64,000 nucleotides of DNA, from the NCBI RefSeq assembly GCF_963676685.1, contig NC_092346.1:55428001-55492000 (forward strand). The letters are read 5' to 3'. This DNA comes from Mytilus edulis. Its lineage: Eukaryota. Position 1 is the first letter of the stretch. Each line of letters opens with the position of its first letter. Shown here one piece after another: positions 3,126 to 55,724 of this stretch. Position numbers and translations under genes: made by a program. The notes under the pieces are model-generated. The model was not told the DNA's origin. It searched no databases and saw nothing but the letters and a program-made list of their open reading frames with translations.

Positions 3126-3320
3126 ATGGGTTTAAGTAGGAATATTGTCAGTTGTATTATTGTTGGTGATGGCATGGTAGGAAAGACATGCTTAGCTAAG
3201 AAATTTTGTGGACAAGAAATAGCAGATAATTATGTTGCAACCATTATGGATACTTTTACTGGAACAGTATCAGCTTATGGACAAAAATATACAATAAACA
3301 TCAAAGACACTGCAGGACAG
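3126..3320 (+). CDS. Gene 1 exon 1: Rho/Cdc42-like small GTPase (188 aa spliced)
   Basis: G1 GDGMVGKT, G2 YVAT, G3 DTAGQ; exon ends CAG|GTACGT, 65 codons, phase 0. Confidence 0.92.
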
Positions 3321-3662
3321 GTACGTTCATTCTTATATTGTTTAAGGAGGAATTGGCAACTTTTTTTTATTCAATTGACAGTAGATTATTTTTTTCTACG
3401 AAAAGTATGTTAGTCATAAAACTCTTCTTGCTTCCAATATGTCGAGATTCTAATACAGAATATTTTTTGTATTTAACAGATTCGCCAAAAATTCTCGATT
3501 CCAAACCAATTAAAAATGTTTCTCTCCGTCTGCGAAAAACGTTCAACAAGGGCTCAAAGTGCATATTAACCTCTCTAATGCAATTATTTTAAGCTGTTAT
3601 ATATCCATGATAATAGACTATTTCTAGTCATCTTAGTTAATTGATATTTCTTATATTTGCAG

Positions 3663-4034
3663 TTTGAAGACTCTGAAATGAGAGAAATTGTTTACAAAGA
3701 GTCCAATGTATGTGTCATCTGCTATAGCGTTCTAGACAGGGATTCTATGGAGAGTGTAAAATCATTATGGGTTCCAGAGATAAAGAACTTTTCCAAGAAA
3801 GTGCCCGTTGTTCTTGTAGCTACCCAGTCTGATCTCCGAGAAAAGGATAATACTGATCATATTACTAACGCTGAAGGATCAAAACTTGCCAAGGAATTGG
3901 GTATTGAACAATTTGTTGAAACTTCATCTTTTAAGAATGAAGGTGTTAAAGAGGCATTTGAAACTGTAGTGAAGGCCTTAGTCATGAACAAGAAGCGAAA
4001 AGCAAAATGGTTTAAGCCAGCATTTGGGTCTTGA
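3663..4034 (+). CDS. Gene 1 exon 2: Rho/Cdc42-like small GTPase C-terminal half
   Basis: Acceptor TTTCTTATATTTGCAG|TTT; CYSV...WVPEI...PVVLVATQSD (G4), ETSS (G5); tail KKRKAKWFKPAFGS then TGA, no CAAX; AATAAA at 4343. Confidence 0.92.
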   Translation, partial: FEDSEMREIVYKESNVCVICYSVLDRDSMESVKSLWVPEIKNFSKKVPVVLVATQSDLREKDNTDHITNAEGSKLAKELGIEQFVETSSFKNEGVKEAFETVVKALVMNKKRKAKWFKPAFGS

Positions 4035-15114: not shown

Positions 15115-15486
15115 TCATCGTCCGAAAACACGTTTTATAATACTGGCTGTCTTCTTTTTGTATATAACTGAAGCTAAAACAACGCTTTCAAGAACATTTC
15201 TCATCCCAGTTTTCGCAGCAGCTGAACATTTATTATAATATTCAGCCCCAATAAGTTTTGTCATATTTTGTCCTTCTAAGTCAGAAACATGTTGAGTGTT
15301 ATTTTCATCGCGAATGTCACTTTGGGTCCCAACTAAGATAACTGGCCTCCTTTTGTTGAATTTACGAATTTCATGTATCCAGAATGACTGCACATTGTTA
15401 AAGGTTTCTCTCTCTACTACACTATAGCAGACGATAATGACGTCAGCATCTGAAATCATTTGTGATCGTGTGTGTTCATCTTCATG
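15115..15486 (-). CDS. Gene 2 exon 2: Rho/Cdc42-like small GTPase
   Basis: Acceptor TTTAG|CAT GAA GAT GAA; 372 nt, same length as gene 1 exon 2; GTQSD, CSAA; tail KKKTASIIKRVFGR then TGA. Confidence 0.92.
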   Translation of the reverse strand, partial: HEDEHTRSQMISDADVIIVCYSVVERETFNNVQSFWIHEIRKFNKRRPVILVGTQSDIRDENNTQHVSDLEGQNMTKLIGAEYYNKCSAAAKTGMRNVLESVVLASVIYKKKTASIIKRVFGR

Positions 15487-15624
15487 CTAAATGCAGAAAA
15501 TAGAAAAAAAATATTAATGTGTTTTTAAAGGAGTAACAATGTGGAAAAATCAATTGACTTCGGTTTAAATTTTATTGAAATGTTACTGAAGAAAAAATCC
15601 GTGTAACATTAAGAAATTTCATAC

Positions 15625-15819
15625 CTGACCATTTGTATCCTTTAAATTAACACTGTACTGGTCACCGTAAGCAGTCACATAACCTATATAACTCTCGGCT
15701 ACAGTAGCTACATAATAATCAGGGAACGAGTCACCAGCAAATGCTTTGGCCATGCATGTTTTACCTATAAGTCCATCACCAACAATTGTGCAAGATACAT
15801 CATGACTGAAGCAAACCAT
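15625..15819 (-). CDS. Gene 2 exon 1: Rho/Cdc42-like small GTPase (188 aa spliced)
   Basis: ATG at 15819 (MVCFSH), GDGLIGKT, YVAT, DTNGQ|GTATGA donor, 65 codons; TATA at ~15896-15904. Confidence 0.92.
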
Positions 15820-17358: not shown

Positions 17359-18385
17359 GAATAAGCCGAAGTGATAAAATCCACTGAGAGTCAACTATTG
17401 GCATATGTTTAAGTAAGTGTAGTAAAACTTAATTGATATATAGGTTTAAAAGAGGGGTGAAAGATACCAGAGGAAAATCCAAACTTATAGATCGAAAATA
17501 AACTGACCATGCCATGTTTGTTTTGATCACAGTTTCTGTACATCCCATTCGTTGTATAACCACCTGTTTTGTAAGATATTTGTTAGAAAAAAACCCACCA
17601 AAAACAAAAAACAACTAACTGGATGTTTAAGTCATATATAAATCCATCTGTTTGACAATGTAATACCTGTATCAAGAGTTTCATTTCGAAGTGTTTAATT
17701 TTTTCACGAGTTGTATGTTGTATGTGTATGTTTCTTTGATTTATTTTGCGAAAATGTTTGTGAATTGACATGACTATCATAATTTTTTACAAACAAAAAA
17801 CACCATAATGTACTTTTAATTTTTTTTAATATTCATAATACGTAAAAAATTGATACATTATATTTTTTTACATATTGAATTCATTGTCACTTCGATTATC
17901 ATAATTTGAAAGAGTTTTGTTTGTCATGCAATGTTCAATATTCATAAAACATCACCAGTGTCAGTTTCAGACAGCTGACAATCGTTGTAAGTGTCAATTG
18001 GTATGCTAATATTCACCATGTCCTATTCATTTATTTCCCAATGTGTGTTCGTATTTGCTCCATTACGGCGTAATGGACCATACTATTGTCATTGTGCAAG
18101 GTTATTCACAAACTTTTCAGCAGCCTGCGTTCCAGCTTCGATCCGCAAACTTAATGAAAATTGTTCCGGAATGGAAACGATCACTGTACGAAGTTTGCGT
18201 TTTTCAATGGTATGGTAGAATCGCCTGCATCTATGCCTTCACTCTGCTCCGTATTGCAAATGTACACCGGTGGTACAATGCAAGCAGACGTGGACTTAAA
18301 GTATCAGGCTTCAATCTATCTTCATACTGATATCTGTTTATAATCATATTATTCAACTCTGGGATGAGAGAATTCTCTCAGTTTT

Positions 18386-19138
18386 TCAACGTGAGAAAAC
18401 ACGTTTCAGTACATTTGTCTTCTTCTTTCGGTATCTAATGGCGGCACAAACAACACTTTCAAAGACATTTTTGACTCCGTCATTAGTAGCGGAAGAACAT
18501 TTGTTGTAGTAGTCAGCCTTTATTGATTTCATTAAATTCTGTCCTTCAGTGTCGGACACGTGATCAGTGTTATTTTCATCACGAATGTCAATTTTAGTTG
18601 CCACTAAAACAATCGGCTTTTTCTTGTGAAGTTTTCTGACCTCTGGAACCCAGACGGATTTGGCATTCTCAAATGATTCACTGTCAACTGAGCTATAGCT
18701 TACAATGATTACGTCAGCGTCTGTAATTGCTTGTAATCTTGTTGATTTTTCTTCATGCTGAAAAGATAAATGAGAGAATCATGAGTAAACTATAAAATAA
18801 AATTCATTTATGTTTTGAATCAATGTTTGTGTAAATACAATTCAATATTCTTTTGAATTAAAATAAATTTAATCTAATCTTATTTTATATATTTTCAAAA
18901 TTTGTCTTTATAGATATTTGTAAAGATTCTTTAATAATATTTATTTATATGTTTACCTCATGAATATTCAAATTGTATTTGTCCCCATAAGCAGACACAG
19001 ATCCACTGGTTGTTTCTGAAACTGTGCAACATATTTGTCTGAGAATTGGCTTCCAGCAAATCTTTTAGAAAGGCATGTCTTACCAACCATTTCGTCACCA
19101 ACAATTTCACAGGAAACAGTGTTCTGGTAGCAAACCAT
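18386..19138 (-). pseudogene. Gene 3: two-exon Rho-like GTPase, frameshifted (exon 1 19138-18957, exon 2 18757-18386)
   Basis: 1-nt deletion between 19025 and 19026 relative to paralogs (GTT GC- ACA GTT) gives TGA at 18970-18968; P-loop reads GDEMVGKT; corrected exon 1 ends NIHE|GTAAAC with no DxxGQ; exon 2 is an open 372 nt. An assembly indel cannot be excluded. Confidence 0.8.
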
Positions 19139-21158
19139 TCTTTCGATTTAAAAAAAAATCTTTAAACGTTGAAGTACGTAGAAAAAGTGTTATGCAAGCA
19201 GGTAAAATCTTCAGCTCTTTTATAGTTCACAAGTCGTTTGCTTTGGTAAATTCATTGTCAATTAAGATCTCCTACAAAGTGAAGATTCCATTGTTTGAAA
19301 ACTGTCAATACTGTGTGATCAAATATACCCCCAAGTGTTACAACCAAGGCGATTCTATCGCTGCCTGTGGTTGAAATTTGAAACTTTCTTCTTGTTATAT
19401 TTTTAGCCCTTTTATCTCATTGTAGATAAAAAGGAAACATTCTTTGTTAACTTCATGTTATTGATTATTTTGATGTTGTTTGTATTTCTTTGTTTTGATA
19501 TTTGATAGTTTTTAAACTCTACAGTGAAAATTATCAAACATTATAAGTTCACAATGAACAAAGAGAAAATTAAAGGAACAACAAACATGAATAACAATTT
19601 AATAACTGACTTTGCTTACTACATGGTATTGATTTTTTTTATTATTGACATCCTTATCTTTTGATCCCCGAATAGATATATAGTTGTTTCATTGGCAATC
19701 ATCCTACTAACATTTTTCTTATATTGTTATTTATACCTTGTAGCTATACCTTGTAGCCTATGTCTTAATTAAGACTACCGCATTTTCATTTTTAACCAAA
19801 GAGACAACTTTTGCAAAAAAACTGAAAACAGAACGCCTCTGAAGCGCTATTCTGGATGTAACATCATCAGGAACGCCCAAAGCAGAAAAGTTGAAAACCA
19901 AGAATGTCTAATAACCTGGAAAAAGGACCTAACAATATACTCAAATTTATTTAGGTCAACTTTGCATAAGGCAGTTGAAACCTAAGTGTCTTTTGATGTC
20001 AAAACTTGCGATACTGCATCATACCACATCTTCTGTTTTATATATACTTGCATAAATATAACTACAGTTTAGTTAGAGATTTGAAAAGATAGATTCACAT
20101 ATTCTTTTGCATGTTTCTTATATAAAAAAAAGGACATAGTCATTCAGTATTGATAAAGCGAAGAGCATATACAATATAAAAAAAGGTCATTCCTCTCTCC
20201 AGAACTATCAGAATAATCCATCATAGAACTGTCCTGAATAGTACTAGTTGACACCATCAGGGTAAACTAGATTAAAAGGTAAGATATAGATAATACCTTT
20301 ATAACCGACTGTGTCAAGGTCGTTAAAAACTTCCATCATCATATACATTCATAGTATTTTAAGAAAGCTTAAAAGTAGTCACATATATAAAATTTCTGTG
20401 ACAGAGACACTTGCTTACTACTGGAAATAGTTAAGAACTGGATACAAACAGATATGTACATAGTCATTGGCCATATACAGACCCAGGAAGAATTTTAGGA
20501 AGCAATGACATACACGAACAGCTATATCATAGAACTTAGGCCATAAGTGTCCATTCATCAGAATTTTATAATTTCCGAAAACAAAACATTGGTACAAAAA
20601 TGTATATTCTGAATACTCCAGCTCGCATTATTTTGGCACAATCTTTATGGGGTGTCTATTTATTGTAAAACCGCTTTTGTTTTAAACAATACACTTACAT
20701 TTGGCCAACAGAAAGGTATCATATTTTTTGTTTTGATTTTGAACAATAGAATATATTCCCTGCAGAGATCTTACAAAGGCAGTAATATGAGGCGTCCAGG
20801 TGGTAATACATTGTCTATATTGGGAGCATGTATGCTATTCATTTGCTTTATTAAGCAACTTCTTTTCCTCTATATAAAAAGCATGAAACATTTTGCATAT
20901 TTTGATTTCAAAACCCGTGCCTGCAACAACGTAGTTTGGAGGAAAATTTGATATACCTTTTTTTATAAACAAGTGTTCTGTGAATGCAATTACAGTGTCT
21001 GTTCTAATGTGGTGATGTACATTTACGTTTATGGATATAATAAAGGTGGAGCATTTAAATATTCCTTTTATTCAACGCAAACGTGTAACAGTGACAGATA
21101 TTTTCATAAATTGGATTTAATTAATTGGTTTCTGAAATGATTTAGAGCTGAACATACA

Positions 21159-22176: not shown

Positions 22177-23939
22177 AGACATTAAAGACATATCAACCAT
22201 AGAACTGCATGGAAAATAACTGTCACAATCCTGACTTGGTACAGGTACCAAAGTCACATATTAAATTGTTAACAGTTCAAATAAGTAACAAATATTATGT
22301 TTCAAATATTTCCCATTGCAGGACAGGAACTGCCTAAATTTTTCGAGTGCAGCCTCCTTCGAAATGCTGTTCATGTTTCATTTTCGGTGTAGAGTTTAAA
22401 ATGTTGTTTTAAGTCATGGTTTAGTCCGGCTTTTGTGACTACTTGTTTTAAATTGTTGCCTTGGTATATTCTGTCCTTTTTTCCATGTCAGACAACGAAT
22501 GTTGAAAACAAAATGTTCAATGCCCGAATAACTTTGTATGTTTTTATCATTCCTCCTGAGTTTTTTACCATTTAAAATGCTCGTAATACTTTATATTTAC
22601 TGATGCTGATAGAATAATATTTTATTAAGATATTTTGGTTATTTAAAATCAGTTTATTAACAAAATTGATGTTTTTTTGGCAAAATTTTGATATTTCTCG
22701 TTTAATAAAAATGTATTTATAGGCTAAATTTTTACGATATAAAGACATTAAAAGTACAAATATCATTAAAAAGTATCAAATATTTTATGTCATTTTACCA
22801 ATGCATCGTTTTTGTACCTTTCAAGTTTTCATTATTTTTTCTAAAAGATTTTTCGTAAAACAAGAAACTTGAATTTACTTTTCTACTTGTTACCATATTC
22901 TAGGACAATCGTTTTTTTTCACAAAAAAAGCTAAATTAGAGGATTGTTGCTTAAAAAAACACTCTTCAATGATACCAGGCTTGTACTTTTTAACGTCAGA
23001 CGTGCTCCTTGTTACATAAGGATCGCCAGTGGGTCTCGAATTAAATCAGTAGGAAGGCATTATGAAAAATAATATTAACAGTTTTTAAACCAAACAAAGA
23101 AAATGTAACCAAAAAACGATAAGGATGTATGATTGATCCTAAGTGTTTCAAATATAGAAAAATTTAAGCGGAACGGATAATAAAAAGTAAAATAACAAAA
23201 ATACCGAATAAAAATGACCGCACCATTAATGTTTCCAGCTTTTTTTTTAGCAGTGGCATCGACCTACTGGACCCATTAAAACCACCAATGATAGCAGGCT
23301 AATAATTTAGGTTAAAACGAGATTATCAATGACTATAGATATTTTTCATTTTCGTAGGCCTGATCCAAACATCTCTTCCCGCTATAAGTAAACCACATAA
23401 TGTGACTTATCAGCGAGTTTTCGTTTATCATGATAAACACAATGGGTGCCGTAAATTGAGCAGAATCTTCTAAACGTTGCAGTGATAATCATTATGCTCC
23501 CCAATCTTAAGTTTTCTTTGTATATATTTGTGCACTGCTGGTTGCTGTTTTTCATCAGGCCATTGGATTGTCTAGAGAGGTATGGGAGTTCATCCTTATT
23601 GATTCTGTTTCTACTTATGAATAATTAGCTAACTTTCCATTATCTTCGATATCAATTAACCTTATGTGTTTGTAGAAATAAGAAGATTCGGTATGGGTGT
23701 AAATGAGACTACTTTACATTCAAGTCACAATGTGTAAAACAGCAATAATTAGTATTTGGAAGTTCAATCAATACTTATACAATAATAATATAATGACAAG
23801 TAGCAATGTGCAAAAGCAGCAATGATAAGTATTTAGAAGTTCTATCAATACACGAGATAGACTTTTTATATGTTAGTGAATAATACTTGTACTAGCACAA
23901 AGATTATGACAGTCAAAGCATATAATGTTTTACAGAATA

Positions 23940-24139
23940 GCAACTATACTAACAAACAATGAAATCAATGAAACAGTATCAATTACACACCACAAGCAGT
24001 GAAATAGTCATATAGGTAGAACTCCAGGGGGTTAATATGATCATATATACAAAATTTAAAACAATAGAATTGTCACTTTGCAGGAGATATTTTATCAAAC
24101 AAAAGAAGAGACGGAGCGATCAACTTAGGTTCTATAAAA
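23940..24139 (+). promoter_or_regulatory. Gene 4 promoter with family-conserved motifs
   Basis: CTCCAGGGGG (~24022), TGCAGGAGAT (~24079), TATAAAA 24133-24139; similar motifs in the same order upstream of genes 2, 3 and 5-9. Confidence 0.55.
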
Positions 24140-24221
24140 GGCAGGCGACTTTAAACTTTCTTCATAACACATTTGTTGATTTAAAAACTCTGACGAAAAC
24201 CAATCTAAGTATAGTTCAAAA

Positions 24222-24770
24222 ATGGTTTGCTACGAGAACACTGTTTCCTGTGCCGTTGTTGGTGATGGAATGGTAGGCAAGACATGCCTTGCTAAAAGAT
24301 TTGCTGGAAACCAGTTATCTGAACAATATGTTGCTACAGTTGCAGAAACAACAACTGGATCTGTGTCTGCTTATGGTGACAAGTACAGCGTCAATATCTA
24401 TGAAGATCAATCAGCAAGATGCAAAACAATAACAGAAGCTGACGTCATTGTGGTATGCTACAGTGCAGTTGACAAAGAATCATTTGAAAACGTCAAATCC
24501 TTTTGGATTCCAATGGTCCGAAAACTAAATAAGAAGAAACCAATTGTTTTAGTCGCTACACATAGTGACATGCGTGATGAGAATAATACTGACCATGTAA
24601 CAGACACTGAAGGACAAAACTTTATGAAATCAATTAACGCTGACTATTACAACAAATGTTCTGCTGCTACAAACGAAGGAGTAAAGAATGTCTTCGAAAG
24701 TGTCGTCTGCGCCGCTATTAGATATAGAAAAAAGAAAACCAATGTGCTTAAACGTGTTTTCGCACGATGA
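24222..24770 (+). CDS. Gene 4: intronless Rho-like pseudo-GTPase lacking G3/switch II DxxGQ (182 aa)
   Basis: Single ORF; GDGMVGKT, YVAT, NIYEDQ where DTAGQ is expected, ATHSD, CSAA; tail KKKTNVLKRVFAR. Confidence 0.92.
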   Translation: MVCYENTVSCAVVGDGMVGKTCLAKRFAGNQLSEQYVATVAETTTGSVSAYGDKYSVNIYEDQSARCKTITEADVIVVCYSAVDKESFENVKSFWIPMVRKLNKKKPIVLVATHSDMRDENNTDHVTDTEGQNFMKSINADYYNKCSAATNEGVKNVFESVVCAAIRYRKKKTNVLKRVFAR

Positions 24771-27216
24771 ACTTGAACTTGTCTCTGCCCGGAGATAAAC
24801 ATTAACTACACAAATCTTGTGTAAAGAATAGCAAAACACTTGCTGTAAACAGACTTTGCGATAGAAGGAGATGGAGGTGGAATGTACCACTGGTGTACAT
24901 TCCGACAATGGATTAAAATATTGCTGTCGAATTACAGTGTTTGAGATGGAGAATAAGTAGTTCCGGTGATGTTCAAGGACATGAACTTAGAAAAACAATA
25001 TGAAATCAGTCATATTTATGAACTTTAAAGAGAAACGAATTGACTTAGTGAAAAGACACAAACAATACTTGTTTATTATTGTAAAGATGATAACAACAAT
25101 TACTTTAATTTATGTTTTAAAAATAAATTTTACGAAAAAAAATATTTGTTCTCTTAATATTTTATTGATTGTATATTGAAGGAATGACCTGTAAAGGTAT
25201 AAATACTACTTAGTTACAAGTTTAGACTTAAGTTCAAATAAGAATGATGTTGTATTGCATGAAGACATTGATAAAATAGAGACATCATGAATACTACTTC
25301 TCAGAGAAAAAAAGACGAAAAACAAACAACGGTCCAGTAAAGAATAAGTTGTACAGCACATTTTTAACACAAGTTTTAAGATCATAAAAAATTTACCCAA
25401 CCTATGACAATGCTTTAGGGTGAAACAGAATGCAAAAGTTACGAAAGGGACATTCAAAACACATAAATCAAAACTGAAAACACAATGGCAAAAACGAAAA
25501 TAAAAAACAAAAACCTAAGAAAGCTACATAACACATAGAAAACTAAAGAATAACATACACGAAACCCGTCGAAAAAAATTTGCTTAGGTTATGTTTATCC
25601 GAAATATATTAATTAGTCCTTTATCTGTATTTAAAAGGATTTTTTTATTGACCATGGTATACCTTCATCTTACATTAGTGTTTTCGAAGTTACAATTTAG
25701 TGATTGTGCTCATTAAAAATCACGAAATCTTTGTTGTAAACGACATGTCCTTTTAATCGACCAAACAATAATATGAAGCAAAAGTACCATTCGAAAATAG
25801 TAAAAAAGGAAGTTGAAATCATCATGATTTGTACTCAAATGTCACACCATATCAACAGAGAGGTATCAGTAAAGGTTTGGTGGTTCGCTCGTATTGTCAA
25901 AATTGTTATCTATCGGTTCAATCTCTATATATATTGAACAGAAAATAGAAAAAAGGAATTTCCTCCAGATTTTTCTTAAAAACCCATGTATAACGTTTTA
26001 CTATTCCTCAGTGTGTATTTGCACTTCTATAACGCACGATAACAATCAACGTCATCTTTGTTAAGTGATATGTATTTTTTTATAGAAAACTGCTGAAGCC
26101 TAAAACTCTATGTTGTTTTAATCAATCTGTTATACAAACCCAATAAGACAACGAAAAATTATAAATTGTACGACAAGTTTTTTATTTTCTTTTTTAGGCC
26201 CGGCGTTGTCAATTTTCTTTTCGAATTTTCTAGTCTGCATGTCCTTTTGGTATTCTTCGCTTTGCGTTGTTGTTATCGCTTAATAATTTTTATTAACGTG
26301 ATACGTGATCTGAAGAAATATTTTTTTTGTATATTGTTGTATTTTGTTAACATTTTGTTTTGAATATTCCCTTCGTATCTTTTGCCTATTTTTATTCCGA
26401 ATACCTGAACATTTTACATAGGTCTTGAGAAATGTTTCTCTATTTTAAACACAATTAAGCTGTCGTATGAACATCATATAATAGTAGATCATGACTTGGA
26501 ATTGATAAACCATTGGGACCATAAAATTTACGAAAAACTTAACAACCTTTATTTGAATTGGTAATCTTTTGTTGAGTTTTGATTTTTCATCTTGTTCATG
26601 AAGTATTCATGATGTTGTCTATAATGATGTGTTTTTATTTGCATTAAAAGCAAAGTGTGTTACCCAGTAACATTGATATTTTGTTTAAATATGAATATTT
26701 TTCATTGATTTTTATCAAAAATTAATTGACTGTAACAACCTTTACATGTCATTCCTTCAATGTATTGCGAGTACATATCAAACAAAATAAACACATTTTT
26801 TTTTATAAGATCATTTATTTTCATTATATAAATCACTGTTATTATTTTACAATAATATACAATAATAATTTGTGTCTTTTCACCATTTAAGTTTTTTTCT
26901 TCAAATTCATTCTCATAACTAATTTATAATGTTTTTCAATGAATTATTACGTTTCCCTTTAAGTTGATACTGATGACTGATTTCATATTGTTTTTGTAAG
27001 TTTGTGTCCTTGAACATCATCGGCACTACTTATTCTCCATCTCAATCACTGTAATTCGACATTAGTATTTCAATCCGTCTTTGGAATGTACACCAGTGGT
27101 ACATTCCATCTCCAACTCCTTTTATCTCAAAGTCTTTTGGTAGCAAAAGGTTTTGCTATTCTTAACACAAGATGTGTTTAGTAAATGTTTATCTCCGGGC
27201 AGAGATAAGTTCAAGT

Positions 27217-27765
27217 TCATCGTGCGAAAACACGTTTAAGCACATTGGTTTTCTTTTTTCTATATCTAATAGCGGCGCAGACGACACTTTCGAAGACATT
27301 CTTCACTCCCTCATTTGTAGCAGCAGAACATTTATTGTAATAGTCAGCATTTATTGATTTCATAAAGTTTTCTCCTTCAGCGTCTGATACATGATCGGTA
27401 TTGTTCTCATCACGCATGTCACTATGTGTAGCGACTAAAACAATTGGTTTCTTCTTATTGAGTTTTCGGACCATTGGAATCCAAAACGATTTGACGTTTT
27501 CAAATGATTCTTTGTCAACTGCACTGTAGCATACAACAATGACGTCAGCTTCTGTTATTGTTTTGCATCTTGCTGATTGATCTTCATAGATATTGACACT
27601 GTATTTGTCACCGTAAGCAGACACGGACCCAGTTGTTGTTTCTGCAACCGTAGCAACATATGTGTCTGAGAATTGGCTTCCAGCAAATCTTTTAGCAAGG
27701 CATGTCTTGCCTACCATTCCATCACCAACAACGGCACAGGAAACAGGGTTCTCTTGGCAAACCAT
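27217..27765 (-). CDS. Gene 5: intronless Rho-like pseudo-GTPase (182 aa)
   Basis: ATG at 27765 (the ORF-track start 27774 is TTG); near-identical to gene 4; TATA 27848-27854. Confidence 0.92.
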   Translation of the reverse strand: MVCQENPVSCAVVGDGMVGKTCLAKRFAGSQFSDTYVATVAETTTGSVSAYGDKYSVNIYEDQSARCKTITEADVIVVCYSAVDKESFENVKSFWIPMVRKLNKKKPIVLVATHSDMRDENNTDHVSDAEGENFMKSINADYYNKCSAATNEGVKNVFESVVCAAIRYRKKKTNVLKRVFAR

Positions 27766-32311: not shown

Positions 32312-33762
32312 AAATCTAAATTTAGATACACAACGTTATGATTTCAGTTTTGCAAAACATAGAATTTTCTTTTTCGTTGTGCCATATACATATCAGTCGA
32401 AAATAAAGTTTTAAGGCTTCTGAAGCGGTTTTGTCCACAACAATTTATCATGATTTTTAATAGACCCATTAACTTATGGTTAACCTGAGAAATGTGAGAT
32501 AAGATCTAAGCATACCAATGTCATTAGAAGTACCATAAGGTGAACACAGACAGACGAAAGACTGAAATCAGTCGGATAAATATAACCTGAGATTATCTCC
32601 ATTATTTGATGGAGTTTGTGTTATTAAGTGTCAAGTTTTCTAGATAGTATTTATTTGAGTTTTTTTAATTGTTGTATTTTTTATATGGTCTTGTCAGCTC
32701 TCATCATTGCATGAGAAAATTTAAAATCACAAATAAACTCCAAGAAAAATTAAACGAAGGTCTTTAATCAAATGGCAAAATCATAAGATAAAACACATTG
32801 AACGAATGGATAACAACTGTCATATTCCTGACTTGGTACACACCATTTTTTTATGTAGAAAATTGTGAATTGAACCTGGTTTTATAGCTTGCTAAACCTC
32901 TCACTTCTATAACAGTCGCATCAAATAATGAGAGTTTAATACACCTTCAGTATCTTCTTCATCTGTATTTTTTCTGATATATGAACATTTGACGTGTGTT
33001 GGATGTGAACTGAGTAATTTATCCACACATTAAAACAACTAGTGGATCTCGTCTATAATAATTGTTTTTGTTTTATTATAATGGGTTTCGAATATTGCAT
33101 GTTTTTCGTGGGTTTTTTTATGCCCTCCGACCGTTTTTAATGCTTCTCCTTCGACATGTAGTTGTATCCCATTTATATGTTTTTAATTGCTTTTAAATAA
33201 AAATCAAAGTTTTTCCCATTAACATTGATGTTTTGTTTCAATATGAAAACATTTCAATGATTTTCGTCAAAAATGTTACTGACTGTAACAACCTTTCATT
33301 CCTTTCACTGTATTATGAGTATATAGCAAACAAAATACATATTTTTCATATAAGATAATTTATTTTCATAATATAAATCACTGTTATCATTTTACAATAA
33401 TTAACAATAATAGTTTGTGTCTTTTCATCACTTCAGTTTTTTCTTCAAATTCATCATCATGACTAATTTGATATTGTTTTTCAATGAATTATTTCGTTTC
33501 TCATTAAGTTCAAACTGATGACTGATTTCACATTGTTTTTGTAAGTTTGTGTCCTTGCCCTTACTGGCACTACTTCTTCTTCATCTCACAATCACTGTAA
33601 TTCGACAGCAGCATTTCAATCCATCGTAGGAATGTACACCAGTGGTACATTCCATCTCCAACTCCTTCTATCTCAAAGTCTTTTGGTAGCAAAAGGTTTT
33701 GCTATTCTTAACACAAGATGTGTTTAGTAAATGTTTATCTCCGGGCAGAGATAAGTTCAAGT

Positions 33763-34311
33763 TCATCGTGCGAAAACACGTTTAAGCACATTGGTTTTCT
33801 TTTTTCTATATCTAATAGCGGCGCAGACGACACTTTCGAAGACATTCTTTACTCCTTCATTTGTAGCAGCAGAACATTTATTGTAATAGTCAGCATTTAT
33901 TGATTTCAAAAAGTTTTGTCCTTCAGCGTCTGATACATGGTCGGTATTATTCTCATCACGTTTGTCACTATGTGTAGCGACTAAAACAATTGGTTTCTTC
34001 TTATTGAGTTTTCGGACCATTGGAATCCAAAATGATTTGACGTTTTCAAATGATTCTTTGTCAACTGCACTGTAGCATACAACAATGACGTCAGCTTCTG
34101 TTATTGTTTTGCATCTTGCTGATTGATCTTCATAGATATTGACACTGTATTTGTCACCGTAAGCAGACACGGACCCAGTTGTTGTTTCTGCAACCGTAGC
34201 AACATATGTGTCTGAGAATTGGCTTCCAGCAAATCTTTTAGCAAGGCATGTCTTGCCTACCATTCCATCACCAACAACGGCACAGGAAACAGTGTTCTCT
34301 TGGCAAACCAT
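33763..34311 (-). CDS. Gene 6: intronless Rho-like pseudo-GTPase (182 aa)
   Basis: ATG at 34311; intact ORF; TATA 34394-34400. Confidence 0.92.
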   Translation of the reverse strand: MVCQENTVSCAVVGDGMVGKTCLAKRFAGSQFSDTYVATVAETTTGSVSAYGDKYSVNIYEDQSARCKTITEADVIVVCYSAVDKESFENVKSFWIPMVRKLNKKKPIVLVATHSDKRDENNTDHVSDAEGQNFLKSINADYYNKCSAATNEGVKNVFESVVCAAIRYRKKKTNVLKRVFAR

Positions 34312-38863: not shown

Positions 38864-40350
38864 TAAATCTAAATTTAGATACACAACGTTATGATTTCAG
38901 TTTTGCAAAACATAGAATTTTCTTTTTCGTTGTGCCATATACATATCAGTCGAAAATAAAGTTTAAAGGCTTCTGAAGCGGTTTTGTCCACAACAATTTA
39001 TCATGATTTTTAATAGACCCATTAACTTATGGTTAACCTGAGAAATGTGAGATAAGATCTAAGCATACCAATGTCATTAGAAGTACCATAAGGTGAACAC
39101 AGACAGACGAAAGACTGAAATCAGTCGGATAAATATAACCTGAGATTATCTCCATTATATGAGAGAGTTTGTCTTATTAAGTATCTAGTTTTCTATGTAG
39201 TATTTAGTTGAGTTTTTTAATTGTTGTATTTTTTTATATGGTCTTGTCAGCTCTCATCATTGTATGAGAAAATTTAAAAATCACAAATAAACTCCAAGAA
39301 AAATTCAAAACGAAGGTCTTTAATCAAATGACAAAATCATAAGATAAAACACATTGAACGAATGGATAACAACTGTTATATTCCTGACTTGGTACACACA
39401 TTTGTTTATGTAGAAAATTGTGGATTGAACCTGGTTTTATAGCTTGCTAAACCTCTCACTTCTATAACAGTCGCATCAAATAATGAGAGTTTAATACACC
39501 TTCAGTATCTTCTTCATCTGTATTTTTTCTGATATATGAATATTTGACATGTGTTGGATGTGAACTGAGTAATTTATCCACACATTAACACAACTAGTGG
39601 ATCTCGTCTATAATAACAGAGAACACCTAAGTTAACCATAACCTGAATTGTTTTTGTTTTATTATATTGGGTTTGGAATATTGCATGTTTTTCGTGGGTT
39701 TTTTTATGACCTCCGACCGTTTTTAATGCTTCTCCTTCAACAAGTAGTTGTATCCCATTTATACGTTTTTAATTGCTTTTAAATAAAAATCAAAGTTTTT
39801 CCCATTAACATTGATGTTTTGTTTCAATATGAAAACATTTCAATGATTTTCGTCCATAATGTTACTGACTGTAACAACCTTTCGTTCCTTTCAATGTATT
39901 ATGAGGGATATAGCAAACAAAATACATATTTTTCATATAAAATAATTTAATTTCATAACATAAATCACTGTTATCATTTTACAATAATTAACAATAATAA
40001 TTTGTGTCTTTTCATCACTTAAGTTTTTTCTTCAAATTCATCATCATGACTAATTTGATATTGTTTTTCAATGAATTATTTCGTTTCTCATTAAGTTCAA
40101 ACTGGTGACTGATTTCACATTGTTTTTGTAAGTTCGTGTCCTTGCCCATCACCGGCACTACTTCTTCTTCGTCTCACAATCACTGTAATTCGACAGCAGC
40201 ATTTTAATCCATCGTAGGAATGTACACCAGTGGCACATTCCATCTCCAACTACTTCTATCTCAAAGTCTTTTGGTAGCAAAAGGTTTTGCTATTCTTAAC
40301 ACAAGATGTGTTTAGTAAATGTTTATCTCCGGGCAGAAATAAGTTCAAGT

Positions 40351-40899
40351 TCATCGTGCGAAAACACGTTTAAGCACATTGGTTTTCTTTTTTCTATATC
40401 TAATAGCGGCGCAGACGACACTTTTGAAGACATTCTTTACTCCTTCATTTGTAGCAGCAGAACATTTATTGTAATATTCAGCATTTATTGATTTCATAAA
40501 GTTTTGTCCTTCAGCGTCTGATACATGGTCGGTATTGTTCTCATCACGTTTGTCACTATGTGTAGCGACTAAAACAATTGGTTTCTTCTTATTGAGTTTT
40601 CTGACCATTGGAATCCAAAACGATTTGACGTTTTCAAATGATTCTTTGTCAACTGCGCTGTAGCATACCACAATGACGTCAGCTTCTGTTATTGTTTTGC
40701 ATCTTGCTGATTGATCTTCATAGATATTGACGCTGTATTTGTCACCGTAAGCAGACACAGATCCAGTTGTTGTTTCTGCAACTGTAGCAACATATTGTTC
40801 AGCGAACTGGCTTCCAGCAAATCCTTTAGCAAGGCATGTCTTGCCTACCATTCCATCACCAACAACGGCACAGGAAACAGTGTTCTCGTAGCAAACCAT
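40351..40899 (-). CDS. Gene 7: intronless Rho-like pseudo-GTPase (182 aa)
   Basis: Intact ORF; TATA 40981-40987. Confidence 0.92.
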   Translation of the reverse strand: MVCYENTVSCAVVGDGMVGKTCLAKGFAGSQFAEQYVATVAETTTGSVSAYGDKYSVNIYEDQSARCKTITEADVIVVCYSAVDKESFENVKSFWIPMVRKLNKKKPIVLVATHSDKRDENNTDHVSDAEGQNFMKSINAEYYNKCSAATNEGVKNVFKSVVCAAIRYRKKKTNVLKRVFAR

Positions 40900-42125: not shown

Positions 42126-43334
42126 TTCTAATGCATTTTTTTGTAACATTTTATTTTCATTGAAATTTTGATACATCACATTATGATTTCAGTTTCCACA
42201 CTTCAAATTTTCTATTTCGGAGTGGCATATGGCTATCGGTCAAAATTAAAGTATGGTTGCTTCTAAGGAAGTTTTGTCCACAACAAAGATTTCATGATTT
42301 TGAACAGGCAACTTCACTGATTCTGACTTCAAGATAAGATGAAAGTATGCCAATGAAAATAGAATTGTCTCTAGAACCATGCTGGTACAGAAAGATGAAG
42401 GACTGATATAAGTGGGATACACATAACTCGAGATGACCCATGTTTTGGTGGAGTTTGTGTTGCTCGGTCTTTTTTTCTATGTCATTCTTTGATAACTAGT
42501 TTGTCTTTTTGTCGTTTGTTCTTTTTAGCCATGACGATGCTAGTTTCTTAAGTGTTTTATATCCGCTTCGCATCTTCTATCTCTTTTTGGTTATGCCTTA
42601 TATGTGAACATTTGTCATAGGTGTTGAAACAAATTGCAATATTTTATAATATGTGTTGATAATGTACAGAACAAATAAATCGAACGTTATAAAACGAGTG
42701 GACATTGACCGGGAATTGCTTAACCAATTGGAGCACAAACATTTTAAACATTGTATCCGCAACCTGTATTTTACTTTGTGATTTTTTTATGTACTTTGTT
42801 TTTGTTGTTTCGTCTTTTTTTATGAGTGTTCATTGTGTTGTATCCAGTAATATTGTTGTTTTGTTTCAATTGGTATACTTTCCATCGATTTGTATCAAAA
42901 GCTTACTGACTGTAAGAACTGTTACATGTCATCCCTGTAGTATATCATAAGTAAATGGTTAACACAACAAATCATTTTCATGTAAGATAATTTATTCAAA
43001 CAACAAAAATTAAAGTAATACAATAATATACAAGTATTGGTTGTGTCTTTTCAACATATAAGTTTTTTTCTCTTAAAGTTTATCATCGTAATTAATTTCA
43101 CATTGTTTTTGTAACTGTTTGTCCTTGAACATCACCGGCACCACTTATTCTCCATCTCAATCACTGTAATTCGACAGCAGTATTTCAATCCGTCTTTGGA
43201 ATGTACACCAGTGGTACATTCCATCTCCAACTCCTTCTTTCTCAAAGTCATTTGACAGCAAGTATTTTGCTATTTGGACACATTTGAAGATGTGTAAAGT
43301 ATAGGTTTATCTCCGGGCAGAGATAAGTTCAAGT

Positions 43335-43883
43335 TCATCGTGCGAAAATACGTTTAAGCACATTGGTTTTCTTTTTTCTATATCTAATAGCGGCGCAGAC
43401 GACACTTTCGAAGACATTCTTTACTCCCTCATTTGTAGCAGCAGAACATTTATTGTAATAGTCAGCATTTATTGATTTCATAAAGTTTTGTCCTTCAGCG
43501 TCTGATACATGGTCGGTATTGTTCTCATCACGCATGTCACTATGTGTAGCGACTAAAACAATTGGTTTCTTCTTATTTATTTTTCTGACCATTGGAATCC
43601 AAAACGATTTGACGTTTTCAAATGATTCTTTGTCAACTGTACTGTAGCATACAACAATGACGTCAGCTTCTGTTATTGTTTTGCATCTTGCTGATTGATC
43701 TTCATAGATATTGACGCTGTATCTGTCACCGTAAGCAGACACAGATCCAGTTGTTGTTTCTGCAACCGTAGCAACATATTTGTCTGAGAATTGGTTTCCA
43801 GCAAATCTTTTAGCAAGGCATGTCTTGCCTACCATTCCATCACCAACAATGGCACAGGAAACAGTGTTCTCGTAGCAAACCAT
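43335..43883 (-). CDS. Gene 8: intronless Rho-like pseudo-GTPase (182 aa)
   Basis: Intact ORF; TATA 43965-43971. Confidence 0.92.
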   Translation of the reverse strand: MVCYENTVSCAIVGDGMVGKTCLAKRFAGNQFSDKYVATVAETTTGSVSAYGDRYSVNIYEDQSARCKTITEADVIVVCYSTVDKESFENVKSFWIPMVRKINKKKPIVLVATHSDMRDENNTDHVSDAEGQNFMKSINADYYNKCSAATNEGVKNVFESVVCAAIRYRKKKTNVLKRIFAR

Positions 43884-45115: not shown

Positions 45116-46314
45116 GTTCTAATGCATTTTTTTGTAACATTTTATTTTCATTGAAATTTTGATACATCACATTATGATTTCAGTTTCCACACTTCAAATT
45201 TTCTATTTCGGAGTGGCATATGGCTATCGGTCAAAATTAAAGTATGGTTGCTTCTAAGGAGGTTTTGTCCACAACAAAGATTTCATGATTTTGAACAGGC
45301 AACTTCACTGATTCTGACTTCAAGATAAGATGAAAGTATGCCAATGACAATAGAATTGTCTCTAGAACCATGCTGGTACAGAAAGATGAAGGACTGATAT
45401 AAGTGGGATACACATAACTCGAGATGACCCATGTTTTGGTGGAGTTTGTGTTGCTCGGTCTTTTTTTCTATGTCATTCTTTGATAACTAGTTTGTCTTTT
45501 TGTCGTTTGTTCTTTTTAGCCATGACGATGCCAGTTTCTTAAGTGTTTTATATCCGCTTCGCATCTTCTATCTCTTTTTGGTTATGCCTTATATGTGAAC
45601 ATTTGTCATAGGTGTTGAAACAAATTGCAATATTTTATAATATGTGTTGATAATGTTCAGAACAAATAAATCGAACGTTATAAAACGGGTGGACATAGAC
45701 CGGGAATTGCTTAACCAATTAGAGCACAAACATTTTAAACATTGTATCCGCAACCTGTATTTTACTTTGTGATTTTTTATGTACTTTGTTTTCGTTTTTT
45801 TCATCTTTTTGTATGAGTTTTCATTTTGTTGTACCCAGTAAAATTGTTGTTTTGTTTCAATCGGTATATTTTTCTTCGATTTGTATCAAAAGCTTACTGA
45901 CTGTAAGAACTGTTACATGTCATCCCTTCAGTATATCAAAAGTAAAATGGTTAACAAAACAAATCATTTTCATGTAAGATAATTTATTCAAACAACATAA
46001 ATTAATGTTATACAATAATATACAAGTATTGGTTGTGTCTTTTCAACATATAAGTTTATTTCTCTTTAAGTTCATCATCGTAATTAATTTCACATTGTTT
46101 TTGTAAGTTCGTGTCCTTGAACATCACCAGATCCACTTATTCTCCATCTCAATCACTGTAATTCGACAGGTCTTTGGAATGTACACCAGTGGTACATTCC
46201 ACCTCCAACTACTTCTATCTCAAAAGTCTTTTTACAGCAAGTATTTTGCTATTTTTGACACATTTTAAGATGTGTAAAGTATAGGTTTATCTCCGGGCAG
46301 AGACAAGTTCAAGT

Positions 46315-46863
46315 TCATCGTGCGAAAACACGTTTAAGCACATTGGTTTTCTTTTTTCTGTATTTAATAGCGGCGCAGACGACACTTTCGAAGACATTCT
46401 TTACTCCTTCGTTTGTAGCAGCAGAACATTTATTGTAATAGTCAGCATTTATTGATTTCATAAAGTTTTGTCCTTCAGCGTCTGATACATGGTCGGTATT
46501 ATTCTCATCACGTTTGTCACTATGTGTAGCGACTAAAACAATTGGCTTCTTCTTATGGAGTTTTCTGACCATTGGAATCCAAAAGGATTTGACGTTTTCA
46601 AATGATTCTTTGTCAACTGCACTGTAGCATACAACAATGACGTCAGCTTCAGTTATTGTTTTGCATCTTGCTGATTGATCTTCATAGATATTGACGCTGT
46701 ATTTGTCACCGTAGGCAGACACAGATCCAGTTGATGTTTCTGCAACTGTAGCAACATATTGTTCAGCAAACTGGCTTCCAGCAAATCTTTTAGTAAGGCA
46801 TGTTTTGCCTACCATTCCATCACCAACAACGGCACAGGAAACAGTGTTCTCGTTGCAAACCAT
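46315..46863 (-). CDS. Gene 9: intronless Rho-like pseudo-GTPase (182 aa)
   Basis: Intact ORF; TATA 46950-46956; upstream region diverged but keeps CTCCAGGGG (47057-47066). Confidence 0.92.
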   Translation of the reverse strand: MVCNENTVSCAVVGDGMVGKTCLTKRFAGSQFAEQYVATVAETSTGSVSAYGDKYSVNIYEDQSARCKTITEADVIVVCYSAVDKESFENVKSFWIPMVRKLHKKKPIVLVATHSDKRDENNTDHVSDAEGQNFMKSINADYYNKCSAATNEGVKNVFESVVCAAIKYRKKKTNVLKRVFAR

Positions 46864-54193: not shown

Positions 54194-54562
54194 TCATTTA
54201 CCCATGAGAGTGTGAAGAAGACTTGATCGACGCCTTCTTTTAGACTTTATAACTGATAGTAAAATATCTTCAAATAACTCATCTACTTCTTCTTTGTTAT
54301 CAGATCTACACTCGATGTACGCATCAAATTTGTTAGATTCCATAATATCAAGTCCTTCTCGTTTAGATACATTGTTATGTTCGTCTCTTGTGTCTTTGTA
54401 TGTGGCAACTAATACCACTGGCGTTTTCTTGCATAGGTTTCTAATTTCAGGAATCCAGAATGACTTGACATTTTCAAAGGATTCTCTGTCAGATACACTA
54501 TAACACAAAATAAATACATTGGCTTCTTTGTAGGACTTTGTTCTAACCTCCTTATAGTCATG
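54194..54562 (-). CDS. Gene 10 exon 2: divergent Rho-like small GTPase
   Basis: Acceptor TTTTTCAG|CAT GAC TAT (HDYKEVRTKSYKEANVFILCYSV); VATYKD, ECRS; tail KRRRRSSLLHTLMGK then TGA. Confidence 0.9.
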   Translation of the reverse strand, partial: HDYKEVRTKSYKEANVFILCYSVSDRESFENVKSFWIPEIRNLCKKTPVVLVATYKDTRDEHNNVSKREGLDIMESNKFDAYIECRSDNKEEVDELFEDILLSVIKSKRRRRSSLLHTLMGK

Positions 54563-55523: not shown

Positions 55524-55724
55524 CTGGCCAGATGAGTCTACAATTTTGATGACATAATTTGATCCCAGCATGTAAGTCGGTACAGTGTATAAATCAGAAA
55601 CTGTAGCTGTATAGTCGTCTGATGTTTGACTTCCGGTAAATGTTTTACAAATTTGAGTCTTTCCTACCATCCCATCTCCTACAATAGGGCACATCACAGT
55701 TTTATCATTCTCGTGTGTTAGCAT
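55524..55724 (-). CDS. Gene 10 exon 1: divergent Rho-like small GTPase (189 aa spliced)
   Basis: GDGMVGKT, YTAT, DSSGQ|GTTAGT, 67 codons, same phase-0 intron as genes 1 and 2; TATA 55775-55781. Confidence 0.9.

What the first reader, a model, noticed from the sequence alone, without database searches (positions are those of the whole stretch)
18753..18962. Preserved intermediate: stepwise G3 loss, then intron loss via CATGA microhomology
Seen: gene 3 still has the intron, but its exon 1 is four codons shorter (NIHE| instead of NLKDTNGQ|), giving ATT CATGAG gt...ag CATGAA GAA AAA TCA ACA AGA. CATGA therefore flanks the intron on both sides (18962-18958 and 18757-18753). Deleting between these repeats removes the 199-nt intron plus exactly 2 codons and yields I-H-E-E-K-S-T-R. 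That aligns without gaps to I-Y-E-D-Q-S-A-R (ATC TAT GAA GAT CAA TCA GCA AGA, from 24396) in the intronless copies and explains the lengths 188, 184 and 182 aa. The intronless genes share upstream DNA with gene 3, so they are not retrocopies. Inference: imprecise intron loss by microhomology-mediated genomic deletion, with the intermediate state preserved in the same cluster.
Basis: partly seen in the sequence, partly recalled or inferred. Interest (0 to 1): 0.8.

Follow-up and report, generated by a model that had tools for sequence, protein, structure and literature searches.

The report
Mussel GTPase intron lost between repeats
In a mussel gene cluster, one gene keeps its intron between two copies of the letters CATGA, while six sister genes lack the intron plus two codons; this is a tidy but not unprecedented example of how an intron can be deleted from DNA.

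Summary
CATGA lies at 18962-18958 and 18757-18753 on the minus strand, on either side of a 199-nt GT..AG intron. Contigs of two runs that look like RNA join 18957 directly to 18757, so there is no micro-exon.

This frameshift allele segregates in the population. One run shows the intact frame, and orthologues in three Mytilus species encode 184 aa.

The order of events is supported:
- Eleven exon-1 ORFs from other mussel-like DNA end NI-x-E and run on into an intron, so G3 loss is old and came before intron loss.
- Close relatives of genes 4-9 are 184-185 aa in M. californianus and M. coruscus, with the two extra codons. They are 182 aa in M. edulis, M. galloprovincialis and M. trossulus.
- Shared promoter DNA rules out retrocopies.

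It is not shown that one 205-nt deletion removed the intron and the two codons together. Precise intron loss followed by a 6-nt slippage gives the same product. The exon structure of the 184-aa sister-species genes would decide this, and no tool here reached it.

This is a known kind of event. The scan had already noted the six intronless genes on this same window (s1-832286), not on other DNA.

The parts
18957..19138 (-). Gene 3 exon 1. It is 182 nt in this allele, against 183 nt (61 codons) when intact, and ends ...N I H E.
   Evidence: The intact orthologues are P0006, P0052 and P0053, and P0054 is an exon-1 ORF.
19024..19025 (-). Site of the 1-nt deletion (frameshift) in the window's gene 3 allele.
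   Evidence: One search shows a gap against all paralogs. In one search the X1 and X15 contigs lack the base, as the window does, while the X17 contig has one more base here, which restores the frame.
18958..18962 (-). The exon-1 copy of CATGA. One more exon base (G, 18957) follows it.
18758..18956 (-). Gene 3 intron: 199 nt, GT..AG, phase 0, single copy in the genome.
   Evidence: One search shows the joint in X15 and X17 and a colinear X1 contig. In one search the intron's only match in the genome is itself.
18753..18757 (-). The exon-2 copy of CATGA (first five bases of exon 2).
18386..18757 (-). Gene 3 exon 2: 123 codons plus the stop codon.
   Evidence: It matches Pfam Ras PF00071.
19155..19529 (-). 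Upstream DNA of gene 3 that is homologous to the upstream DNA of genes 5, 7 and 8. It includes a conserved CTATAAAAG about 75 nt before the ATG.
   Evidence: One search gives 76-80% identity over 361-389 nt and no match to gene 2 or gene 4. One search gives the alignment.
18261..18277 (-). Conserved palindromic 3'-flank element shared by genes 3-9.
   Evidence: 7 matches, one downstream of each of genes 3-9 and none by genes 1, 2 or 10; 0 expected by chance.
15115..15819 (-). Gene 2, a paralog that keeps G3. Exon 1 ends NLKDTNGQ, the intron is 138 nt, exon 2 starts CATGAAGAT, and the product is 188 aa.
24222..24770 (+). Gene 4, intronless, 182 aa. The junction ATC TAT GAA GAT starts at 24396.
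27217..27765 (-). Gene 5, intronless, 182 aa.
33763..34311 (-). Gene 6, intronless, 182 aa.
40351..40899 (-). Gene 7, intronless, 182 aa.
43335..43883 (-). Gene 8, intronless, 182 aa.
46315..46863 (-). Gene 9, intronless, 182 aa.

Best explanation
Gene 3 is the surviving intron-bearing member of a G3-less branch of a Mytilus Rho/Cdc42-like GTPase cluster. It shows the gene layout from which the six intronless 182-aa genes came.

Step 1 is old and shown. Twelve bases at the end of exon 1 were lost, most simply the D-x-x-G core, leaving ...N-I-x-E before the retained phase-0 intron. Point changes then turned x into H, so the exon-1 end (CATGAG) came to repeat the ancestral start of exon 2 (CATGAA).

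Step 2 is inferred. In the branch leading to genes 4-9, the DNA between the two (C/T)ATGA copies was deleted. Most likely this was a single 205-nt end-joining event at the microhomology, removing the intron and exactly two codons. It happened after the split from M. californianus and M. coruscus, whose copies still encode the two codons.

Step 3 is inferred. The deleted form then spread over the tandem array by unequal crossing-over or gene conversion.
For: - Anatomy and arithmetic hold.
- The splice is confirmed, with nothing between the exons, in two runs from two studies.
- 11 of 12 exon-1 ORFs from other mussel-like DNA end [NT]-I-[QNK]-E and run on into GT. Gene-3 orthologues of three species read NIHE-HE and are 184 aa.
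- Close relatives of genes 4-9 are 184 aa in 4 of 4 M. californianus proteins. In M. coruscus they are 184 aa in 3 of 4 and 185 aa in 1 of 4. Their junctions read YE-HE, YE-LE, HE-LE or YE-NE. All 15 named M. edulis, M. galloprovincialis and M. trossulus proteins of those clusters are 182 aa.
- About 370 nt of promoter DNA, including the TATA box, and a 3' palindrome are shared by gene 3 and the intronless genes but not by gene 2.
- Gene 3 is nearer to genes 4-9 (dN 0.11, dS 1.2) than either is to gene 2 (dN 0.27-0.28, dS 1.7-1.8).
- The 5-nt CATGA repeat is a better end-joining substrate than the 2-nt AG/AG that a precise deletion would use. This is my inference from the sequence.
- The idea of microhomology-mediated intron loss is in print (PMC3698931, abstract read).
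Against: - I could not see whether the 184-aa genes of M. californianus and M. coruscus have the intron. If they are intronless, the single-step reading is wrong.
- The time available for a one-step loss is short (after that split). A precise loss could have happened anywhere on the long stem (dS about 1.2).
- A copy-specific exon-1 signature is shared across species: gene 9 with P0050, P0048 and P0049, support 92/90. This suggests the array predates the split, so the deletion must then have spread to several copies.
- The free exon-2 tree put gene 3 with the gene-2-like and unnamed rows (86/77) rather than next to genes 4-9, although the AU test does not reject the sister position (p 0.58).
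- The repeat alone has a chance probability of about 3%.
- The window's gene 3 is a frameshifted allele.
Confidence: 0.45

Rival explanations
1. Two steps. The intron was first lost precisely, either by recombination with a cDNA or by end joining at the AG/AG junction bases, in the common ancestor of the Mytilus copies. That left intronless 184-aa genes, as M. californianus and M. coruscus would still have. Later, in the M. edulis complex, one unit of the resulting near-tandem 6-nt repeat (TATGAx-CATGAA) was lost by replication slippage, and the shorter form spread through the array.
For: - The 184-aa state exists among the closest relatives of genes 4-9 in two sister species.
- No exon-only ORF fragments belong to their protein clusters, whereas the gene-3 cluster holds such fragments (P0054, P0055). 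This is weak evidence, because those species may simply not be sampled in that collection.
- The long stem (dS about 1.2) gives ample time for a precise loss.
- Short deletions at near-tandem repeats are commoner than 200-nt ones and could recur in several copies (established knowledge).
- Precise losses are reported as the major type (PMC4443532, start of abstract only).
Against: - It needs two rare events at the same spot instead of one.
- The observed product is exactly what one end-joining event at the longest available in-frame microhomology would give.
- Other mussel-like DNA shows several distinct intron-bearing copies (11 exon-1 ORF clusters), so arrays of intron-bearing copies are normal in this family.
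Confidence: 0.4
2. Independent events. Genes 4-9 arose from a gene-2-like ancestor that still had G3, by one deletion of 18 exon bases plus the intron. Gene 3 lost its 12 bases separately, and its CATGA repeat is coincidence.
For: - 188 - 6 = 182, so one deletion would explain the length.
- The repeat alone has about a 3% chance probability.
- The window's gene 3 is decaying.
Against: - The 184-aa proteins closest to genes 4-9 read NIYE-HE-DQ.
- NI-x-E exon-1 ends are widespread.
- All 32 G3-less exon-1 rows fall on one side of a branch against the 6 G3-bearing rows, support 73/91.
- The flanks are shared by gene 3 and genes 4-9 only.
Confidence: 0.03
3. Intron gain. Gene 3 was intronless, and an element inserted, creating CATGA as a target-site duplication.
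For: Direct repeats flank the intron.
Against: - The 3' splice site lies at the same phase-0 position as in genes 1, 2 and 10 and in L031.
- The intron is single copy in the 1.37-Gb assembly.
- Exon-1 ORFs of other mussel-like DNA run on into the same E|V-N-I (GTAAAT-like) intron start in 9 of 11.
Confidence: 0.03
4. Genes 4-9 are processed retrocopies that were later amplified.
For: They lack the only intron.
Against: - About 370 nt of upstream homology to gene 3 reaches some 300 nt beyond the conserved TATA box.
- They lie in the same tandem cluster, next to gene 3.
- Two codons are missing, which a retrocopy of a correctly spliced mRNA would not lack.
Confidence: 0.02

Closest known systems
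Microhomology-mediated intron loss (van Schendel and Tijsterman 2013, PMC3698931; abstract read)
   Same: A small intron is lost at the DNA level, with short identical sequences on both sides of the lost segment.
   Different: In that model the microhomology lies at the exon-intron junctions and the loss is exact. Here the repeats lie wholly in exon sequence, six bases out of register with the junctions, so two codons would go as well. Here it is also a single gene family, not a genome-wide statistic, and the single-step nature is unproven.
Imprecise intron loss by genomic deletion (for example PMC4443532 in plants; search listing and start of abstract only)
   Same: The intron is gone together with a few flanking coding bases, in frame and fixed.
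   Different: This case is an animal tandem array. The pre-loss layout is kept in a paralog (gene 3), and the two codons are kept in sister species.
Reverse-transcriptase (cDNA) mediated precise intron loss
   Same: It removes an intron while leaving the promoter and flanks in place.
   Different: It predicts exact removal. The present copies lack 6 further bases, so a second event would be needed.
Rho/Cdc42-type small GTPases and pseudo-GTPases
   Same: The proteins match Pfam Ras PF00071 and Roc PF08477. The P-loop GDGxVGKT and a T-x-S-D G4-like motif are present.
   Different: The D-x-x-G-Q switch II motif is absent in genes 3-9.

Membership tests
Microhomology-mediated (end-joining) intron loss | The intron is absent in the derived genes at a position where relatives have one. 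| tested here: met
   Genes 4-9 are colinear ORFs. Genes 1, 2, 3, 10 and L031 have a phase-0 intron at that place.
Microhomology-mediated (end-joining) intron loss | Identical short sequences bound the lost segment in the pre-loss state. | tested here: inconclusive
   The feature is met in gene 3 (CATGA twice), but gene 3 is a paralog at dS about 1.2. For the true ancestor only proteins are at hand (YE-HE and similar).
Microhomology-mediated (end-joining) intron loss | The intron and the flanking bases were removed in one event. | not testable with these tools
   This needs the exon structure of the 184-aa genes of M. californianus and M. coruscus. No tool here holds those genomes, and the runs on offer were of three organisms that all hold half or more of gene 3's words.
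Microhomology-mediated (end-joining) intron loss | Loss in genomic DNA, not by retroposition. | tested here: met
   Upstream homology with the TATA box and a shared 3' element.
Precise (cDNA-mediated) intron loss | Exact removal of the intron with no change to the exons. | tested here: not met
   The present 182-aa genes lack 6 exon bases against gene 3 and against the 184-aa orthologues. It may still hold for an earlier step.
Processed retrocopy | No homology upstream of the transcription start; dispersed location. | tested here: not met
   homology to about -390; tandem array beside gene 3.
Transposon-derived intron (introner-like) with target-site duplication | Many copies of the intron sequence in the genome. 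| tested here: not met
   The only match in the assembly is the intron itself. That tool warns that very common words are skipped.
Rho-family small GTPase (Pfam Ras PF00071) | A match to the family profile above its cut-off. | tested here: met
   Gene 4 scores 93 bits (cut-off 21.6). Exon 2 of gene 3 scores 56.8 bits and exon 2 of gene 2 scores 59.9 bits.
Rho-family small GTPase (Pfam Ras PF00071) | G3 motif D-x-x-G-Q (switch II). | tested here: not met
   It is absent from genes 3-9 and present in genes 1, 2 and 10 and in L031.

The most novel reading that the evidence does not exclude
A single 205-nt end-joining deletion between two exonic 5-nt repeats removed an intron plus exactly two codons in the ancestor of the M. 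edulis complex and was then carried to every member of a six-gene tandem array. Both the pre-deletion gene layout (gene 3, and intron-bearing 184-aa copies in M. californianus and M. coruscus) and the product are still alive. That would make it a fully reconstructable natural case of imprecise, microhomology-mediated intron loss and of its spread by concerted evolution in an animal.
Probability: 0.42. Interest if true: 0.5.

Novelty: new member of a known kind. Interest (0 to 1): 0.35.

Why it matters
Mechanisms of intron loss are mostly inferred from genome-wide statistics. Cases where both the before and the after state can be read side by side are few. Here the before state is expressed and correctly spliced, and the after state is under purifying selection (dN/dS 0.14-0.47). 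Sister species hold a state with the two extra codons. One look at their gene structure would therefore tell whether a 5-nt exonic repeat directed an imprecise loss or whether a precise loss was followed by slippage. The case also shows that a region already stripped of the switch II motif tolerates further in-frame loss. It is a clean teaching example rather than a new principle.

Tried and rejected
What I tried that led nowhere:
- Sister-species DNA. The metagenome contig scan gave 16 loci. Only L031 is a close relative, and it is a gene-2-like gene that keeps DTNGQ. It holds no second family member.
- Exon-only ORFs of the sister species. Searches with gene 4 and with its first 60 codons found none that belonged to the relatives of genes 4-9. 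All 28 members of those four clusters were read. They are full length except one 166-aa row. This is no evidence either way, because those species may not be sampled there.
- Sequencing runs. They were of three coded organisms, and every DNA run listed holds more than half of gene 3's words. None looked like a more distant Mytilus, so the sister-species gene structure stayed out of reach.
- Run X21 (raw RNA reads of organism B). No read was laid, so it is no test.
- Trees. The exon-2 tree used 34 rows and 121 columns, with the first two codons left out. The free tree placed gene-3-like rows with the gene-2-like and unnamed rows (86/77). Holding gene-3-like rows with the relatives of genes 4-9 gave a log-likelihood 1.2 higher (p-AU 0.58). 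Holding all G3-less rows together gave 0.9 higher (p 0.56). So the exon-2 tree is unresolved. The exon-1 tree used 38 rows and 59 columns. It put all 32 G3-less rows on one side of a branch (73/91) but did not resolve gene 3 against genes 4-9.
- Rows left out of the trees. For exon 2: P0008, P0014-P0018, P0020, P0023-P0033 and the cluster members other than those named. For exon 1: the window's own gene 3, because of its frameshift; its orthologues stand in for it.
- Intron homology between genes 2 and 3. Nothing convincing appears in the alignment, as expected at dS 1.7.
- Literature. 'intron loss' + 'microhomology' gave 47 papers, 'imprecise intron loss' gave 11 and 'Mytilus' + 'intron loss' gave 11. 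None of the listed titles concerns this family. A 'find' for imprecise, in-frame and codons in PMC3698931 gave 0 hits. No supplements were asked for.

Readings I rejected, listed under rivals: retrocopy, intron gain with target-site duplication, and independent deletions.

Full report
WHAT IS THERE

The window is AT-rich animal DNA (GC about 0.31). It lies at 55,428,001-55,492,000 of contig C3 of a 1.37-Gb assembly. The closest database proteins are Mytilus proteins that their sources name CDC42 or Ras homolog member Q.

A translated search of the window with the pieces of gene 3 found ten Rho/Cdc42-like genes:
- Gene 1 at 3126-4034 (+).
- Gene 2 at 15115-15819 (-).
- Gene 3 at 18386-19138 (-).
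- Six uninterrupted 182-codon genes at 24222-24770 (+), 27217-27765, 33763-34311, 40351-40899, 43335-43883 and 46315-46863 (all -).
- Gene 10 at about 54200-55724 (-).

Gene 4 and the second exons of genes 2 and 3 match Pfam Ras PF00071 above its cut-off. In the whole assembly the six intronless genes are the only ones of their kind, and gene 3 is their only close intron-bearing relative, at 79% identity over exon 2. The next closest is gene 2 at 57%.

CHECK OF THE OBSERVATION

On the minus strand gene 3 reads ...AAT ATT CAT GAG | GTAAAC ... TTTCAG | CAT GAA GAA AAA TCA ACA AGA. CATGA lies at 18962-18958 and 18757-18753. The intron is 18956-18758, 199 nt. Genes 4-9 all read ...AAT ATC TAT GAA GAT CAA TCA GCA AGA, so a deletion from one repeat to the other (205 nt) gives their layout without gaps.

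Gene 2 ends exon 1 with NLKDTNGQ and has 65 + 123 codons. Gene 1 ends exon 1 with NIKDTAGQ.

Chance gives an in-frame shared 5-mer within 12 nt of both exon ends in 3.1% of 200,000 random draws, and one in any frame in 8.5%. The repeat is therefore suggestive, not compelling. CATGA at the start of exon 2 is ancestral, since genes 2 and 10 have it too.

In this window exon 1 of gene 3 lacks one base where all paralogs have it, at 19024/19025. The frame breaks after ...DKYVA. The allele also has GDE for GDG in the P-loop, and K-I for Q-S and S for R in exon 2, compared with the orthologues P0006 (M. galloprovincialis) and P0053 (M. edulis).

READS

Of the 24 runs offered I laid four on 18200-19350.
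- X1 holds all sampled words and may be the source sample. It has a 1620-nt contig colinear with the window from 18200 to 19065, intron included, with no difference. The frameshift is therefore not an assembly slip.
- X15 and X17 are the same coded organism from two other studies. The tool labels them 'RNA?' as a guess. Each has one contig (1043 and 646 nt, depths 16.3 and 9.6) that joins 18757 to 18957. The joint skips 199 nt with CT..AC on the plus strand, which is GT..AG on the gene strand. There are 109 and 110 letters on the shorter side and no letters in between.
- Both X15 and X17 have no depth in the four bins lying wholly inside the intron (18785-18940) and none from 19097 upward, while depth continues past the stop codon. 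That pattern fits RNA.
- The X15 contig carries the 1-nt deletion. The X17 contig has one more base there, which restores the frame found in P0006. The frameshift is therefore a segregating allele. Both contigs carry the Q-S and R variants (18591, 18595, 18680).
- X21 (raw RNA reads of another coded organism) laid no read, so it is no test.
- Short contigs with 5-8 differences from the window, and a loose end that reads the intronless junction, are cross-laid pieces of genes 4-9.

ORDER OF EVENTS

A search with the first 60 codons of gene 4 returned 12 short proteins. Eleven are exon-1 ORFs from unnamed ENA, Logan or JGI contigs. They end [N/T]-I-[Q/N/K]-E and then read on into V-N-I (9 of 11), V-I-R or V-N-T, which is a GTAAAT-like intron start as in gene 3. 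The twelfth is a gene-2-like fragment. The matching exon-2 ORFs start HEEQ, NEEK or YDEQ after intron-derived residues. The G3-less, intron-bearing layout is therefore widespread in mussel-like DNA and older than the intronless genes.

K, N, Q, H and Y at the variable position are linked by single base changes. The simplest origin is loss of exactly D-T-N-G from ...K-D-T-N-G-Q. This is my inference.

L031, the only close hit of the metagenome scan (1 of 16 loci), is a gene-2-like gene that keeps DTNGQ before the intron.

SISTER SPECIES

The four protein clusters closest to genes 4-9, plus the gene-3-like cluster and a one-member M. trossulus cluster, were listed in full. Lengths come from that table, and I read the sequences of some members.

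| Species | Proteins close to genes 4-9 | Junction |
|---|---|---|
| M. californianus | 4 of 4 are 184 aa | YE-HE, YE-LE, HE-LE |
| M. coruscus | 3 of 4 are 184 aa, 1 of 4 is 185 aa (extra residue near the N-terminus) | YE-HE, YE-LE, YE-NE |
| M. edulis, M. galloprovincialis, M. trossulus | all 15 named proteins are 182 aa | YE only |

Gene-3 orthologues of M. galloprovincialis, M. edulis and M. coruscus are 184 aa with NIHE-HEEKSTR. The loss of the two codons dates to the stem of the M. edulis complex.

NOT RETROCOPIES; KINSHIP

- The DNA upstream of gene 3 aligns with that of genes 5, 7 and 8 over 361-389 nt at 76-80% identity. It gave no blastn match to gene 2 or to gene 4.
- The multiple alignment shows a conserved CTATAAAAG about 75 nt before the ATG in genes 3-9. 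Homology reaches some 300 nt further upstream in genes 5-8. Genes 4 and 9 share only the proximal part, in more divergent form.
- A palindromic element about 110 nt after the stop codon occurs once behind each of genes 3-9 and nowhere else in the window: 7 matches against 0 expected.
- Gene 3 against genes 4-9 gives dN 0.11 and dS about 1.2. Gene 2 against either gives dN 0.27-0.28 and dS 1.7-1.8.
- The trees are less clear. The free exon-2 tree put the gene-3-like rows with the gene-2-like and unnamed rows (86/77). The tree holding gene 3 with the relatives of genes 4-9 had a slightly higher likelihood and was not rejected (p-AU 0.58).
- The exon-1 tree put all 32 G3-less rows on one side against the 6 G3-bearing rows (73/91).

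Taken together, gene 3 is closer to genes 4-9 than gene 2 is.

SELECTION AND ARRAY HISTORY

Among genes 4-9, dN/dS is 0.14-0.47 with dS 0.05-0.19.

In exon 1, gene 9 groups with one M. galloprovincialis, one M. californianus and one M. coruscus protein (92/90). More than one copy therefore probably existed before these species split. The two-codon (or 205-nt) deletion must then have spread among copies by unequal crossing-over or gene conversion.

MECHANISM

What is shown:
- G3 went first.
- A spliced 184-aa layout with (C/T)ATGA on both sides came before the 182-aa intronless layout.
- The change was made in genomic DNA.

What is not shown is whether the intron and the two codons went together. 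Both routes give the same product:
- One step: an end-joining deletion of 205 nt at the 5-nt repeat. This is the longest in-frame microhomology available, against 2 nt (AG/AG) for an exact deletion.
- Two steps: exact loss somewhere on the long stem, then slippage of the resulting near-tandem 6-nt repeat in the M. edulis complex.

I rate them 0.45 and 0.40. The exon count of the M. californianus and M. coruscus genes decides between them, and no tool here reached those genomes.

Intron gain with a target-site duplication is disfavoured. The 3' splice site is the family's conserved phase-0 site, and the intron is single copy in the assembly.

COMPARISON WITH WHAT IS KNOWN

Microhomology-mediated intron loss has been proposed from Caenorhabditis and Drosophila comparisons (PMC3698931, abstract read). 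Imprecise losses are reported from plants and other groups (PMC4443532 and others, listing and start of abstract only). Deletion of introns during double-strand break repair has been suggested (PMC3020277, listing and start of abstract only). Three searches found nothing on this mussel family.

This is a new and unusually legible member of a known kind, not a new kind.

Noticed in passing
window 19024-19025, 19092, 18591-18595, 18680: The window's gene 3 is a frameshifted allele that also has P-loop GDG>GDE and G4-region QS>KI changes. It is still transcribed and spliced. The frameshift segregates: the X1 and X15 contigs carry it and the X17 contig does not. One exon-1 ORF from other mussel-like DNA (P0038) also has GDE.
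   Followed up: partly
window 18261-18277, 24883-24899, 27087-27103, 33633-33649, 40221-40237, 43202-43218, 46180-46196: A conserved palindromic element (TGTACCAC-Y-GGTGTACA) lies about 110 nt after the stop codon of each of genes 3-9 and nowhere else in the window (7 matches, 0 expected by chance). It could be a 3'UTR hairpin or a protein-binding site.
   Followed up: partly
window, first 30 nt after the stop codons of genes 3-9 (for example 24771-24800): The short inverted repeat just after the stop codon (CTCTC..CCC.GAG), noted earlier as s1-832547, is visible in the downstream alignment of genes 3-9.
   Followed up: no
window 24222-46863, compared with proteins P0048, P0049 and P0050: Exon 1 keeps copy-specific signatures shared across Mytilus species (gene 9 with one copy each of M. 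galloprovincialis, M. californianus and M. coruscus). The stretch around the junction is nearly identical in all six window copies. This mosaic points to gene conversion or unequal crossing-over within the array.
   Followed up: partly
window 23772-24221 and 46864-47313 (upstream of genes 4 and 9): Gene 4 is inverted relative to genes 5-9. Genes 4 and 9 share only the proximal ~230 nt of the promoter region with the other copies, in more divergent form. Blastn of the gene 3 upstream DNA found no match to gene 4.
   Followed up: no
L031 1854-2800: A metagenome-labelled contig carries a mussel-type gene-2-like GTPase gene (DTNGQ kept, intron of about 370 nt). Host DNA of a mussel is therefore present in that assembly. 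Many of the unnamed exon-only ORFs probably have the same kind of origin.
   Followed up: partly
G000:C3 55.23-55.55 Mb: The family extends well beyond the window. Further exon-1 and exon-2 matches at 33-44% identity to gene 4 are spread over about 320 kb of the same contig, with other groups on contigs C1 and C2.
   Followed up: no
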